64,000 nt of DNA from Hemiscyllium ocellatum (Eukaryota): assembly GCF_020745735.1 (NCBI RefSeq), contig NC_083426.1:29760001-29824000 (forward strand), given 5' to 3'. The translations under genes were made by a program, and so were the position numbers. Under the pieces are notes generated by a model, which was not told the DNA's origin, searched no databases, and was given only the letters and a program-made list of their open reading frames with translations. This document shows positions 39,610-48,419 of the stretch, piece after piece; positions within the stretch are counted from its first letter, which is position 1; each line of letters opens with the position of its first letter.

Positions 39610-40502
39610 GTACAGCATAGTTTTTTTTAATAAGGATTTACAAATGTTTATGTGTATTCATGAATGCATTTTTGTGGTTACTGTCAACTTATTGATACAC
39701 GTGTGTCTCTTTTATTCACTACTTTTAAATAGTGCACCTATACATCAATGACCTACTCTGAAAGTGTTGCTTTTTGCTATTATCATTTATATTGTTATGA
39801 AGATAGCTCTGCATATGGTGACAGACTTAAGCAGACATTCACTGCTGATCATTCATTTTTAAGTGTCTTGAAAGTAGGATTGGGAATGTGTAATTTTTCT
39901 TTGGAGAGCAAAATCAGCCATTCTTTTATAAAAATAGAAACATTGATTGGTCATTCATATACTGGAAGGTAAAGAAAAGACTGTAAATACAGAGAAAATT
40001 AAATCTTGAAACCTAAGTGCAGAAGTTAATGTTTAACGGCAGAATTGGGAACCAAATTCACTGGAAGAATGAAGTTTGATGTCTTTTTCCCAAGTCAGAA
40101 GCTATTAATTCCTTTATTTGAAAGAAAAATATGTTGATATTTGAGCTGAAAACTGATGTTAACAAAGGATATTGAATTGTTTATCGCAATCTTTAGTACA
40201 AATGAATTGTATTCCTTAATAGTGATTTTTTTTGACAAATCCTGGATCTCTTGCTTGGAGTTTAACATTTTTAACTATTCACTTCAAAATTATTTAATAT
40301 TTAGATAAAAGCAAAATTAATTTACAATGTGGTATCATTAGTAGTTTGAAATAAGTATCATATCTCCAGCCAAATATAGTTGACATACTGTTCCTAAGTC
40401 TGTATGAATAAATGAATCGATATGTGATTAATTAATTACTGTTGTGTTGTATTTTTCATTTATTATTCTTTTAAAAAAAATGTTTCTGCTTTCAGGTCAA
40501 AG

Positions 40503-40619
40503 ATGATTTCTAAGAGAATAATGATAAATGTGATGGTGGTTTGCATTGTTGCAATGCTGGCAGAACAGACTGAGGGGTTCCTGACCTTTTTGAGCCCAAG
40601 AGATTACCAAAAAAAGATT
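40503..40619 (+). CDS. MLN: Prepromotilin coding exon 1: signal peptide (25 aa) plus N-terminal part of mature motilin
   Basis: Translates MISKRIMINVMVVCIVAMLAEQTEG|FLTFLSPRDYQKKI. The signal resembles recalled human MVSRKAVAALLVVHVAAMLASQTEA. 39 codons, the same as the recalled human exon. Acceptor at 40495, donor gtacgt at 40620. Confidence 0.92.
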
Positions 40620-40857
40620 GTACGTAAAACACTTATTATACAGTTTTAATACTTGATTGTTTGTGTTTTAAGCAGATTATGCCATTTTTCCTTGCAAGTT
40701 TGTAATATGTAATTTGTGAAGAAAGAAGGATTGCATTATAATACAGATAAAATGTCCACATATGGTGCAGTCTTGCCCCAGGAAACTCAAATCTGGTTTT
40801 GTCAAGATTAATTATCTGCTTGTGAAATGTCATTGACATTATATTTTTGCTTCAAAG

Positions 40858-40950
40858 GAAAATTACAAAAGCAGAATGAACCTCCAAAAGAGATCTGAAG
40901 AAAATAACTTACCAGAAGTGTCCAGTATGGAAGAAATGAAAGTAATAAAG
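40858..40950 (+). CDS. MLN: Prepromotilin coding exon 2
   Basis: tttttgcttcaaag|GAA...AAG|gtagat. Translates ENYKSRMNLQKRSEENNLPEVSSMEEMKVIK: a KR dibasic site, then an acidic spacer ending in IK as in other motilin precursors. Phase 0/0. Confidence 0.88.
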
Positions 40951-41074
40951 GTAGATAGATGGAAAATAAAGTTGGATAGTTTTTTTGTATGAACTAGTTC
41001 TTCAATCTGACGTTTGCATTGATAAGAACCTATAGAAAGCAAATGTGAAAATTTCAGCTTGCTTTTGGCCATAT

Positions 41075-44792: not shown

Positions 44793-45439
44793 GTAAGACA
44801 GATTTTACTCAGTCTTTGAAATTTAACTTCAAAAGATATAGAGAAAAGCTTTAAAACTTAAAATCTTGTAATGATCATACTGTAATATATGCTGATAATT
44901 AATCAAAAATGAAATATATCTCTGTATAATTATGTTTAATCACTCATTAGTTTAATAAATATGTTTTATTTATGTTTAAACAGTTACTGAGTAGGGAATG
45001 GCATAGTAAAAATGTCACTGGACTAGTTACCCAGAGGGCAGGTTAATACTCTGGAAAACAACAAAAAAATGCTCCTGCAATTTTTCTTTTTGTTTCATAT
45101 TTTCAGCATCCACAGTTCTTTATTTTATAATACTCTAGGGATACTGGTTTTAATGGCGAAATTTAAATTCAATTAGTAAAATCTGTAATTGAAAGTTAGT
45201 CTGAAAACCATGTAATTCATTTTAGGGAAGGACATCTTCCATCCATGCAGAGTCTGGCCTCTGTGTCATTCCAGAACCACAGCAATGCAGTTGACACTAA
45301 ACTAATTAATATAGTAAGCCACTCTATTAAAGAGGAATTGTGATAAGCAACAAATGGTAGGCCTGTCTATGATGCTCATATCCCTCAGAAAATTTAATTA
45401 AAAATAAAGTTATTGCTAATCAGATCTAGATATAAATTT

Positions 45440-46005
45440 GAGCTTAGTTGAACCTTTTCTGGTCAGATCACATTTGGAATATTGTGCCCAGTTTTGGGCT
45501 CCATATCTCAGGAAGGATGTACAAGCCCTGGAGTGTGATTAAAGGAGATTCATGAGAATGGGCCCAGGAATGAAAAGCTTAACATATGAGGAATGTTTGA
45601 GGAATTTGGGTTTATACTCAATGGAGCTTAGAAGGATGAGGGAGATATAATTGAAACATACAGAATACTGAATAGCCCGGACAAAGCAGATGTTGTTTCC
45701 ATTGATAGGAGAGATTAGGACCTGAGGACATAGCTTTAGAATAAAGGAAAGACCTTTTAGAACAGAGATAAGGAGAAACTTCTTGATCCAGAGAGTGGTA
45801 AATCCATGGAATTCATTGCCATAGAAGGCTGTGGAGTGCAGGTCATTCAGTATACTTAAGACTGAGATGGATATACTCTTGAATATCAAGGGTTACGGGG
45901 AGAAAGTAGGAGAATGGGGTTGAGAAATACATCAACCATGATTGAATGGTGGAGCAGACTCAATGGGCTGAATGGCCTAATTTCTGCTCCTATATCTTAT
46001 GGTCT
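45440..46005 (+). mobile_element. CR1-clade LINE 3' fragment
   Basis: HLEYCAQFWAPYLRKDV-like sequence and typical 3' tail. Confidence 0.8.
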
Positions 46006-46181
46006 TCAAATACTGTACAAGTTTTGAATGGTTATATAGTTCTTGATGACATTTTTTCAATGCAAAACCTATCTTGAAATCTACAATATTTTTACACTTA
46101 AATATTGTGTGAGAATTATATGATATTCAAAGATATGTAGACACTGACAATAATTTTGTTTCTTTTCCTTTTTCAAAACAG

Positions 46182-46189
46182 GTCAATGA
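46182..46189 (+). CDS. MLN: Prepromotilin terminal coding exon (G-Q-stop); AATAAA at 46286-46291
   Basis: Strong polypyrimidine tract tttcttttcctttttcaaaacag|GT CAA TGA completes the phase-1 codon. Poly(A) signal about 100 nt downstream. Total precursor 108 aa. Confidence 0.75.
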
Positions 46190-48419
46190 CTTCAGCAAAT
46201 CAGGCTGATTAAATATCGATGTATAGTTCACAAGTGACAGAGAACAGTTGTAGGAAACTTATATGTATAGGAACATTTAATAATTAATAAAATTATAACA
46301 TAATGATGACTTTTGTGTGGCATTGAAAATGTCTGCTTATATACGAATGCTGCATCAAACATATAGCAATTCTGGAGCAATCTTGGGATTAAATTTTCCT
46401 ACATTCTGAGAGCTTTTTCCAAACTTCTGAAACACACTTCTGCCTTTCTCTCCAGAAGGCAATGCCTCAAGCTGAGACATGGAGCTGGATTTAATGTAGC
46501 CCACTGCAGATGTAAACATAATGCTGGCCCACTTAATTGTGAGCAAGACTCTGTCAGTCTTTTGACAGTGGCATAACTAAAACAGGAAAACAAAAGTTCG
46601 ATGGTGCTTTTAACGAAATCAGCACTTTACAAAGTAATTTTGAAACATAGTCAACATTATGCAAGATTAGTTTTGGAACTGGCTTAATTTACAGGTCTAT
46701 TTTATTTTGAGTAGAAATGTATGAAACAGATGCATTTAAAATAAATCTAATCAATGGTTATTCTTCAATATGTCTATTACACACTTTTGCGATTAATGAT
46801 CCTCAAATCAGTTTTATTAGACCCTTTACATATTTGTACTTCCTAATCTCCACCAAATAGTTACAGTCTTGTGTTTTTGTCATGGCAACCTGCTGTTTGA
46901 GATCAGTATAAAACACACCAATGGTTTAAGGAACACAAAAACTCAGGCATTCATGTTATGTCATAAACAAAGAAATAATGGCCCTTTTCTTTCCATCACC
47001 CCTTCCTCTTCCATCCAAAATTTAAGTGACAATTATACACTGGTCATAACACTGAATGTAAACAAATATATTGTCATGAAACAATAAAATATGTGTGCGA
47101 AAAAGTTTATTTGATGGTATCATTTCGCACTTCTTAAAAATAGCTCAAAAACTGTTTTTCATATTCAATGGGTTATTTTTGGAGCATAATTACATAAGCA
47201 AATGTGGCAAACATTTCCAAAAGCCATAAGGTCAAATAACCATGGAACAGTAACAAGTTAGAAGGAAGTTATTTGGCTCTTACTGTCCATACAAGCTGTC
47301 CATAAGAGCAACTCAGCTGGTCCCACTTCTTTGCTCTTTTTCTGCAGCCCATATTTTCTCTTCATACAGTTGCACAGTCCCTTTTTGAAAGCCACAATTA
47401 GTGCACTTTCAGATAGTACATTCCAGACCCTAACCACTTGGTTATAAAAGGTTTTCCTTTTCTTGCTTTTGGTGGAGGTGAAGCATGCAGCTACTACTGG
47501 TATGGCCTGATTGGATACTTCTAATAGGGCTGTATGTGGTTACCCCACCTGCTAGGTGCCTCCTGGAACCACCTTGACTCCTTGTGAGGAAAGTCACCTG
47601 CAATGCTGAACAGGTTCTTTGTGCCCCTGTCACATGCCTTTGATCTTGAGGACCAATGGTTGAGGCAATGGAGTATTGGTGTGTGTTCCTCTTCAGTAGG
47701 CCCTGACGGTGTCCATGGAGGCAGACAGATGATTCATAATACAGTTGCAGCTTCTGGGAAATGAGGGCCATTGTTTCCTAAATACGTGTCTGCTGCTCCT
47801 GTTTCAACCTGTCCACATAGGTGTAGTCCCTAATTGCCGATACCATAGGGTCTTCTCTTGTCTGGTGCTGAGGTGCCTGATACCCTCGGTGAGTCTGTGG
47901 CTGCAGCATTTCTTCCTTAGCCAGCAGTACAACCGTCATGGTGAGGTGCTCCTAAACTTTCTAGGATTAACATACTCATCAAGATGTCGATCTGAAATAC
48001 TGTGGGGCACAAGAAGCAGCCTTGTTGATGCTTCCCCTGAAGCCTCAGTACACTTGTCCTCAGAAATCCAGGCAGTAGCTGGACAGGTAGTGAAGATACT
48101 GGTTGCACCTGCAAGACATAGGAGAGAGTGTGGTGTTTTGGTCTGTGGTTAGAAATGGTGTGCAATGAATGAGACTGACAGTGAAGTTCATGTGAAGCTA
48201 AATAAAGCCAATTGTTTTCCCTGGGTAGTTATTTAAAGACATTGCTCTTAACCAGTAAGTCACTTTACAATTTGGGAACGTATTGCTCTTTGCCTCCTGT
48301 GAAGAAGTGAAATAACACAAAGGAAAAGCTTAGAGAATGAAAGGACTTGAGAAACAAAAAATAATCCCTCACCCTGGGTATTGGTGCCATGAAACAATTT
48401 CCCCAGTTCTCCCCCCTCT

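What the first reader, a model, noticed from the sequence alone, without database searches (positions are those of the whole stretch)
40496..46291. Complete shark motilin gene missed by the ORF track, with ghrelin-like ancestral features
Seen in sequence: four GT-AG exons splice to a 108-aa preprohormone, MISKRIMINVMVVCIVAMLAEQTEG-FLTFLSPRDYQKKI-ENYKSRMNLQ-KR-SEENNLPEVSSMEEMKVIK-LCVPFEIGIKLSSKQFQKYGEHLGELLQNILSENKN-GQ. Established: motilin and ghrelin are paralogous gut hormones, and MLN lies directly upstream of LEMD2 in mammals. Inference: the signal peptide, Phe1 and synteny indicate motilin, while the mature peptide and C-peptide look like ghrelin, so this may be close to the ancestral motilin/ghrelin precursor. 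I am not aware of a functionally characterised cartilaginous-fish motilin.
Basis: partly seen in the sequence, partly recalled or inferred. Interest (0 to 1): 0.85.

Follow-up and report, generated by a model that had tools for sequence, protein, structure and literature searches.

The report
Epaulette shark motilin gene, already annotated
The four exons are real and encode the shark's motilin (gut hormone) precursor next to LEMD2, but public databases already hold this exact protein, and its ghrelin-like look is shared to a lesser degree with motilins of early-branching bony fishes.

Summary
It matches Pfam Motilin_assoc at 55 bits.

An identical 108-aa protein is already public as "promotilin-like [Hemiscyllium ocellatum]". 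Ten chondrichthyan species in all carry annotated copies. "Missed" therefore applies only to a prokaryote-style ORF list.

Orthology to MLN rests on synteny. MLN lies upstream of LEMD2 on the same strand in shark, ray, bowfin, bird and mammal loci, whereas bowfin GHRL lies between CCDC174 and TATDN2. Profile scores agree (MLN 103 bits, GHRL 75 bits).

The ghrelin-like features are real. The mature peptide scores slightly better against ghrelin, and elasmobranch precursors are the most ghrelin-like motilins tested. However, reedfish and sturgeon motilins start FLSFFSP, and the C-peptide still scores higher with MLN.

One new detail: an in-frame 18-bp deletion in exon 2 removes the position of the ancestral "22 aa + KK" cleavage site. 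The predicted hormone is therefore 24 aa, ending before KR.

I found no functional study of a cartilaginous-fish motilin. Interest is low to moderate.

The parts
40496..40619 (+). First coding exon. It begins after an AG acceptor, with the ATG at 40503. The signal peptide (25 aa) is 40503-40577. Residues 1-14 of the hormone (FLTFLSPRDYQKKI) are 40578-40619. The donor is gtacgt.
   Evidence: Its 117-nt coding length equals that of Chiloscyllium, Stegostoma and bowfin MLN. The signal peptide scores 36 bits on the MLN HMM and 7 bits on the GHRL HMM.
40858..40950 (+). Second coding exon. Hormone residues 15-24 (ENYKSRMNLQ) are 40858-40887. The Lys-Arg cleavage site is 40888-40893. The associated peptide then begins. 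This exon is 93 nt here but 111 nt in other sharks.
40873..40876 (+). Junction of an in-frame 18-bp deletion relative to Chiloscyllium and Stegostoma. It removes the six codons VGK(G/N)(V/L)P that occupy the position of the ancestral G-K-K processing site.
   Evidence: DNA alignment A4; protein alignments A1 and A2.
44684..44792 (+). Third coding exon. It holds the core of the motilin/ghrelin-associated peptide (LCVPFEIGIKLSSKQFQKYGEHLGELLQNILSENKN).
   Evidence: Pfam PF04643 covers residues 64-106. tblastn finds only this copy in the window.
46182..46291 (+). Terminal exon. It carries the last 2 nt of the Gly codon, Gln, the stop TGA (46187-46189), and about 100 nt of 3'UTR up to AATAAA at 46286-46291.
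   Evidence: The acceptor and the GQ-stop are identical in Chiloscyllium and Stegostoma. The 8-nt terminal CDS matches bowfin MLN; bowfin GHRL has 5 nt.
50898..52343 (+). Long ORF that is the first coding exon of the downstream LEM-domain gene (LEMD2). It is on the same strand, 4.7 kb after the motilin stop codon.
   Evidence: Pfam LEM at 56 bits. The region is colinear at about 92% with the Chiloscyllium gene, whose product carries LEM plus MSC domains.

Best explanation
This is the motilin (MLN) gene of the epaulette shark, Hemiscyllium ocellatum. It has four coding exons, and probably one upstream non-coding exon. It encodes a 108-aa preprohormone.

Proposed mechanism (inferred, not shown):
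- The signal peptide is removed after Gly25.
- A prohormone convertase cuts at Lys50-Arg51.
- This releases a 24-residue peptide, FLTFLSPRDYQKKIENYKSRMNLQ, and a 57-residue motilin-associated peptide.
- By homology, the peptide is made in gut endocrine cells and activates the motilin receptor to drive gut contraction.

The shark precursor has evolved slowly. It therefore keeps features of the common motilin/ghrelin ancestor: xL(S/T)FLSP at the N-terminus and VPFEIGIK in the C-peptide. In other sharks the hormone has the classical motilin layout of 22 residues followed by KK. In carpet sharks that site decayed, and in Hemiscyllium an 18-bp deletion removed it.
For: Gene and product:
- Splicing and translation are confirmed.
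- Pfam Motilin_assoc scores 55 bits against a cut-off of 22.
- An identical protein is public under the name promotilin-like, and orthologues exist in ten chondrichthyan species in all.

Synteny:
- The order MLN then LEM/MSC gene, on the same strand, holds in Chiloscyllium, Stegostoma, Mobula, bowfin (SNF-MLN-LEMD2-IPK), a bird and a mammal.
- Bowfin GHRL instead lies between CCDC174 and a TatD DNase gene.

Similarity:
- A profile of 13 sequences (ten chondrichthyan, three ray-finned motilin-like) was searched against 1.84 billion representatives. Listed motilins reach E-values as low as 1e-34; the best ghrelin identified by its GSSFLSP motif has 1.9e-9.
- HMM scores are MLN 103 vs GHRL 75 bits overall, and 36 vs 7 bits for the signal peptide.
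- In the ML tree the bony-vertebrate MLN clade (99/99) and GHRL clade (100/99) both exclude the shark sequences. The shark sequences sit on short branches 0.4-0.5 from the MLN stem and 1.07 from the GHRL stem.

Structure and selection:
- Coding exon sizes are 117/93(111)/109/8. Bowfin MLN is 117/117/106/8.
- dN/dS is 0.15-0.32.
- The 22 aa + KK layout and the Q-x-R-SEE motif are shared with mammalian motilin precursors.
Against: - No transcript, peptide or receptor data were available. Expression, the cleavage sites and receptor specificity are all inferred.
- The tree has three groups and no outgroup, so it cannot by itself show that the shark gene is sister to MLN rather than to GHRL. Orthology rests on synteny.
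- The Pfam N-terminal model PF04644 gives no hit.
- The mature peptide scores slightly better on the ghrelin HMM (9.9 vs 7.7 bits here; about 17.5 vs 12.5 in other sharks).
- I could not retrieve the shark 'ghrelin-like peptide' sequences to place them in the tree.
- The internal Lys-Lys at hormone residues 12-13 could be an additional cleavage site.
Confidence: 0.88

Rival explanations
1. The gene is not the MLN orthologue. It would be the shark's ghrelin orthologue, or a third motilin/ghrelin family member left from the early vertebrate genome duplications, whose product acts on the ghrelin receptor.
For: - The N-terminus xL(S/T)FLSP has Ser/Thr at position 3. It matches a frog ghrelin at 9 of 12 residues, and the ghrelin HMM scores the mature peptide slightly higher.
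- NCBI's pipeline named the Mobula orthologue 'ghrelin-like'.
- The unrooted tree cannot exclude this.
- A review states that the cartilaginous-fish-type ghrelin is paralogous, not orthologous, to other ghrelins, so the family history in sharks is not simple (PMC6533539).
Against: - MLN-LEMD2 adjacency and orientation are conserved in every lineage checked, from ray and sharks to mammal. The bowfin GHRL neighbourhood is different.
- Phe1 replaces the Gly1 of every ghrelin retrieved.
- The signal peptide scores 36 vs 7 bits for MLN, and the whole precursor 103 vs 75 bits.
- Separate elasmobranch ghrelin cDNAs exist (hammerhead AB254128 and a red stingray record, cited in PMC6533539).
Confidence: 0.06
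2. The locus is a decaying or non-functional copy in Hemiscyllium. The 18-bp deletion would have destroyed normal processing, so no active hormone is made.
For: - The deletion removes the position of the ancestral G-K-K site.
- Motilin genes are known to have been lost in rodents (PMC8419268).
Against: - The deletion is in frame.
- The ORF, all splice sites, the stop and the poly(A) signal are intact.
- The KK site had already changed in Chiloscyllium (GKG) and Stegostoma (GKN). These same species have a Lys-Arg site downstream where most other sharks have Gln-Arg.
- dN/dS between Hemiscyllium and Chiloscyllium is 0.15.
Confidence: 0.04

Closest known systems
Motilin precursors of early-branching bony fishes (sturgeon, reedfish and bowfin 'motilin-like'; lungfish promotilin; coelacanth motilin)
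   Same: - Same position relative to LEMD2 (bowfin).
- Same four-coding-exon plan (117 / ~111-117 / ~106-109 / 8 nt).
- The signal peptide ends ...AMLAEQTEG in sturgeon and bowfin too.
- The hormone starts F-L/I-S-F-x-S-P-x-D.
- 22 residues are followed by KK in most sharks.
- All have a Motilin_assoc C-peptide. The coelacanth peptide FISFFSPSDMRRMMEKEKSKAL is listed in PMC8419268.
   Different: - Leu5 gives an exact FLSP, as in ghrelin, rather than FFSP or FISP.
- The C-peptide reads VPFEIGIK, which is ghrelin-like; the bony fishes have PLEIGVR.
- Hemiscyllium has Thr3, lacks six residues, and ends at KR, giving a 24-aa predicted peptide with no Gly for amidation.
Mammalian and avian motilin (FVPIFTYGELQRMQEKERNKGQ type)
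   Same: Orthologous locus upstream of LEMD2. Phe1. Hormone directly after a 25-aa signal peptide. A Q-x-R-SEE motif starts the associated peptide. PF04643 domain present.
   Different: At most 2 of the first 7 residues are shared with the mammalian and avian motilins listed. The Pfam N-terminal model PF04644 does not match. Cleavage is at KR after 24 residues instead of KK after 22.
Ghrelin (GHRL), especially the frog GLTFLSP form
   Same: Paralogous family with the same exon plan. FLSP at residues 4-7. Ser/Thr at residue 3. C-peptide motif PFE(I/V)G(I/V)K. The whole precursor scores 75 bits on the GHRL HMM, the highest of any motilin precursor tested.
   Different: Phe1 replaces Gly1. The signal peptide is unrelated (7 bits). 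The genomic neighbourhood differs: LEMD2 here, CCDC174/TATDN2 for bowfin GHRL. No evidence of acylation.

Membership tests
Motilin (MLN) orthologue group | Precursor layout: signal peptide, hormone immediately after it, basic cleavage site, then a motilin/ghrelin-associated peptide domain | tested here: met
   Pfam PF04643 at 55 bits over residues 64-106. The alignment with 12 motilin-like precursors places F26 at the hormone start.
Motilin (MLN) orthologue group | Conserved genomic position directly upstream of LEMD2 on the same strand | tested here: met
   A LEM-domain ORF starts 4.7 kb downstream. The same arrangement holds in two sharks, a ray, bowfin, a bird and a mammal. Bowfin GHRL has other neighbours.
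Motilin (MLN) orthologue group | Closer in sequence to motilin precursors than to ghrelin precursors | tested here: met
   HMM scores of 103 vs 75 bits. In the library search, listed motilins reach E-values as low as 1e-34, and the best motif-identified ghrelin has 1.9e-9.
Motilin (MLN) orthologue group | Phylogenetic position as sister to bony-vertebrate MLN | tested here: inconclusive
   The tree excludes nesting inside either bony-vertebrate clade and shows a shorter path to MLN. With three groups and no outgroup, the root is not determined.
Motilin (MLN) orthologue group | Hormone of 22 residues starting with Phe and followed by Lys-Lys | tested here: inconclusive
   Phe1 is present. The 22 aa + KK layout is present in Scyliorhinus, Heterodontus and Pristiophorus. 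In Hemiscyllium the site is deleted and the next site is KR after 24 residues.
Motilin (MLN) orthologue group | Activates the motilin receptor and is made in gut endocrine cells | not testable with these tools
   No expression or receptor data were available. No paper on a chondrichthyan motilin was found.
Pfam Motilin_ghrelin N-terminal model (PF04644) | Significant match of the hormone region to the model | tested here: not met
   No hit at E up to 1. The same model is also absent from the precomputed domains of accepted fish motilins and of coelacanth, gar and sturgeon ghrelins. It therefore does not define the orthologue group.
Ghrelin (GHRL) | N-terminal Gly1 with Ser/Thr3 and Phe4 (GSSF-type acylation motif) | tested here: not met
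   The N-terminus is FLTF. Thr3 and Phe4 are present but Gly1 is replaced by Phe. Every ghrelin retrieved starts with Gly.
Ghrelin (GHRL) | GHRL-type genomic neighbourhood | tested here: not met
   Bowfin GHRL lies between CCDC174 and a TatD DNase gene. The window has LEMD2 downstream.
Ghrelin (GHRL) | O-acylation of residue 3 and activation of GHSR | not testable with these tools
   This needs peptide mass spectrometry and receptor assays.

The most novel reading that the evidence does not exclude
Elasmobranch motilin may keep enough of the ancestral ghrelin-type N-terminus (xL-S/T-FLSP) to act on both the motilin and ghrelin receptors, or to be acylated at Ser/Thr3. In that case sharks would preserve a stage before the two hormone systems separated. 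In addition, carpet sharks may have re-engineered the hormone's C-terminal end through loss of the KK site, gain of KR and an 18-bp deletion.
Probability: 0.08. Interest if true: 0.6.

Novelty: already known. Interest (0 to 1): 0.22.

Why it matters
Motilin and ghrelin are sister gut hormones, and how they split is still discussed. The main comparative review of motilin lists no cartilaginous fish (PMC8419268). Shark sequences are the most ghrelin-like motilins tested here, so they are convenient material for asking what the ancestral ligand looked like and which receptor it used. However, the gene models are already public, so this window adds little beyond the lineage-specific deletion.

Tried and rejected
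- **Hara et al. 2018 (shark genomes).** A review says this paper settled the ghrelin relationships. It is not held in the library under DOI or PubMed id, so I could not check whether it already describes this gene. The Chiloscyllium protein from that project's assembly is named only 'hypothetical protein chiPu_2000003'.
- **Shark ghrelin-like peptide precursors.** I searched with a 14-sequence ghrelin profile. It gave 415 hits, of which only the best 120 were listed, and none carried a GVSF-type N-terminus. The tree therefore lacks them.
- **The 5' non-coding exon.** Identity to Stegostoma upstream of the ATG is a uniform ~82% with no peak, so this is unresolved.
- **Another gene upstream.** Long ORFs in 1-40 kb gave no Pfam hit except a reverse-transcriptase fragment.
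- **First exon-finder script.** It failed and was fixed. It still failed for the bird locus L004.
- **Scyliorhinus locus.** The lookup found no record. The Bombina locus returned no neighbouring genes.
- **Rejected readings.** A chance ORF, a tandem duplicate and a pseudogene were all rejected.
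Full report
**1. The observation**

I read the three stretches and spliced the four segments in a script.
- Segments 40503-40619, 40858-40950, 44684-44792 and 46182-46189 join to a 327-nt reading frame.
- Every intron starts with GT and ends with AG after a pyrimidine run.
- An AATAAA lies at 46286-46291, about 100 nt after the stop.
A non-coding upstream exon is therefore likely, but I could not find it.
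- tblastn of the product against the whole window finds only this copy.

**2. What it is**

Pfam places residues 64-106 in the motilin/ghrelin-associated peptide family (PF04643, 55 bits, cut-off 22). The N-terminal Pfam model PF04644 gives no hit.

The large protein collection holds a 108-aa protein that is 100% identical over 100% of the length. NCBI and UniRef name it "promotilin-like [Hemiscyllium ocellatum]". The window therefore comes from the epaulette shark, and the gene model is already public.

Orthologues are annotated as motilin-like or promotilin(-like) in Stegostoma, Heptranchias, Scyliorhinus, Pristiophorus, Heterodontus, Mustelus and Callorhinchus (UniProt "Promotilin"). Two are named differently:
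- the Chiloscyllium protein is a "hypothetical protein";
- the Mobula protein is named "ghrelin-like".

"Missed by the ORF track" is true only because a list of uninterrupted ORFs cannot show a gene made of 8-117-nt coding exons.

**3. Motilin or ghrelin?**

*Synteny.* This is the decisive evidence.
- The ORF at 50898-52343 on the same strand begins with a LEM domain (56 bits). It is colinear at about 92% with the Chiloscyllium gene, whose product has LEM and MSC domains.
- The same order, motilin gene then LEM/MSC gene on the same strand, is on record for Chiloscyllium, Stegostoma, the ray Mobula, a bird and a mammal.
- In bowfin the row is SNF transporter, motilin-like, LEM/MSC, inositol-phosphate kinase.
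- One fused sturgeon-type gene model even joins the two genes (P0021).
- Bowfin ghrelin lies elsewhere, between CCDC174 and a TatD DNase gene.

*Sequence similarity.*
- A profile of 13 sequences (ten chondrichthyan, three ray-finned motilin-like) was scored against 1.84 billion representatives. Listed motilins reach E-values as low as 1e-34. The best ghrelin identified by its GSSFLSP motif has 1.9e-9. Sample names were checked.
- I built HMMs from 22 bony-vertebrate motilin and 24 ghrelin precursors. The shark protein scores 103 vs 75 bits.

*Phylogeny.*
- In a maximum-likelihood tree of 47 precursors, bony-vertebrate ghrelins (100/99) and motilins (99/99) each form a clade that excludes the chondrichthyan sequences.
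- The chondrichthyan sequences sit on very short branches, 0.4-0.5 substitutions per site from the motilin stem and 1.07 from the ghrelin stem.
- With three groups and no outgroup, this tree cannot by itself say which paralogue the shark gene belongs to. I rest orthology on synteny.

*Exon plan.* This agrees with motilin. Coding exons are 117/93/109/8 nt here, 117/111/109/8 in the two other carpet sharks and 117/117/106/8 in bowfin motilin. Bowfin ghrelin is 111/108/109/5.

**4. The "ghrelin-like ancestral features"**

I scored the three parts of the precursor separately.

| Region | MLN HMM (bits) | GHRL HMM (bits) |
|---|---|---|
| Signal peptide | 36 | 7 |
| First 22 hormone residues (this shark) | 7.7 | 9.9 |
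| First 22 hormone residues (most other sharks) | about 12.5 | about 17.5 |
| C-peptide | 67 | 56 |

- The signal peptide is clearly motilin-type.
It shares 9 of its first 12 residues with a frog GLTFLSP ghrelin.

Scored against the ghrelin HMM, elasmobranch motilin precursors rank highest of all motilin precursors tested. Callorhinchus, a chimaera, scores lower.

| Precursor | GHRL HMM score (bits) |
|---|---|
| Elasmobranch | 72-75 |
| Sturgeon | 63 |
| Lungfish | 59 |
| Reedfish | 52 |
| Callorhinchus | 50 |
| Mammal | 43 |
| Teleost | 25-40 |

So the resemblance is real but graded. The N-terminus is not peculiar to sharks:
- sturgeon and reedfish motilins start FLSFFSP;
- bowfin motilin starts FISFISP;
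- the main comparative review lists coelacanth motilin as FISFFSPSD... and remarks on its Phe1 and 22-residue length (PMC8419268).

That review lists no cartilaginous fish, and its text never mentions them. Further searches found no paper characterising a chondrichthyan motilin.

Separate elasmobranch ghrelin cDNAs are cited for hammerhead shark and red stingray. The same review states that this cartilaginous-fish type is paralogous rather than orthologous to other ghrelins, citing Hara et al. 2018 (PMC6533539). I could not read Hara et al..

**5. A lineage-specific change**

In most sharks the sequence after the signal peptide is FLSFLSPSDYQKKLENDRIRVG followed by KK. That is 22 residues plus Lys-Lys, the same layout as mammalian motilin. 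It is followed by ...Q-Q-R-SEE, which also begins the mammalian associated peptide.

- The Gly before KK could serve as an amide donor, as the review predicts for several fish motilins. This is inference.
- In the carpet sharks the pair is lost (Stegostoma GKN, Chiloscyllium GKG), and the downstream Q-Q-R has become Q-K-R.
- Hemiscyllium has in addition an in-frame 18-bp deletion at about 40873-40876. It removes VGKGVP altogether (DNA alignment).
- The predicted hormone here is therefore 24 residues ending before Lys-Arg, with no Gly for amidation.
- The frame is under purifying selection: dN/dS is 0.15 against Chiloscyllium and about 0.3 against Stegostoma, from small counts.

**6. How it most likely works**

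*Shown:* an intact, conserved, spliced reading frame for a secreted-type precursor of the motilin family, at the motilin locus.

*Inferred from the family:*
- signal-peptide cleavage after ...TEG, the position homologous to the known cleavage in mammalian promotilin;
- convertase cleavage at KR;
- release from gut endocrine cells;
- action through the motilin receptor, a G-protein-coupled receptor, on gut muscle or enteric neurons.

*On acylation:* from my own knowledge, not tested here, the ghrelin acyltransferase requires Gly1. This makes acylation of Thr3 in a Phe1 peptide unlikely.

**7. Verdict**

The gene is real and the synteny argument is correct. However, the gene is already annotated for this species and for other cartilaginous fishes. 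Its ancestral look is a matter of degree, shared with other slowly evolving lineages. The only points I did not find stated elsewhere are:
- the ranking of elasmobranch precursors as the most ghrelin-like motilins;
- the decay and deletion of the KK site in carpet sharks.

Interest is low to moderate. The scan's own notes hold two neighbouring first-reader notes on this window and none on other DNA.

Noticed in passing
window 51357-52145 (within ORF 50898-52343): The LEMD2 first exon carries many copies of a Ser/Tyr/Thr-rich unit of about 12 aa (…SDPYTRKPVSSYSERYTG…). This makes the shark proteins 701-786 aa, against 468-505 aa in bowfin and a mammal.
   Followed up: no
window 19900-23000: A G+C-rich island (0.55-0.56, against 0.40 for the whole window) has long ORFs on both strands that hit no Pfam family. 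It could be a CpG-island promoter or first exon of an unrecognised upstream gene, or a repeat.
   Followed up: partly
window 5603-6058 (-), 10356-10685 (-), 30105-30449 (+), 48337-48831 (+), 53884-54168 (+): These are fragments of retrotransposon ORFs: an RVT_1 hit at 5603-6058, and a recurring …[31 protein letters not shown]… tail elsewhere. One copy lies between the motilin gene and LEMD2.
   Followed up: partly
P0021 (446 aa, sturgeon-type) and L003: A public gene model fuses the motilin-like exons to LEMD2 exons. This is an annotation artefact that incidentally documents the adjacency in a chondrostean.
   Followed up: no
P0009 (Mobula), P0008 (Mustelus), P0006 (Pristiophorus): Automatic naming and models are inconsistent. 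The ray orthologue is called 'ghrelin-like'. The Mustelus model reads into intron 1 (VRKTLK…), and the Pristiophorus model carries an extra 22-residue insert before the last two residues.
   Followed up: no
L002 12935-17187: Stegostoma has about 4 kb of extra sequence in the intron corresponding to window 40951-44683, which probably reflects a repeat insertion.
   Followed up: no
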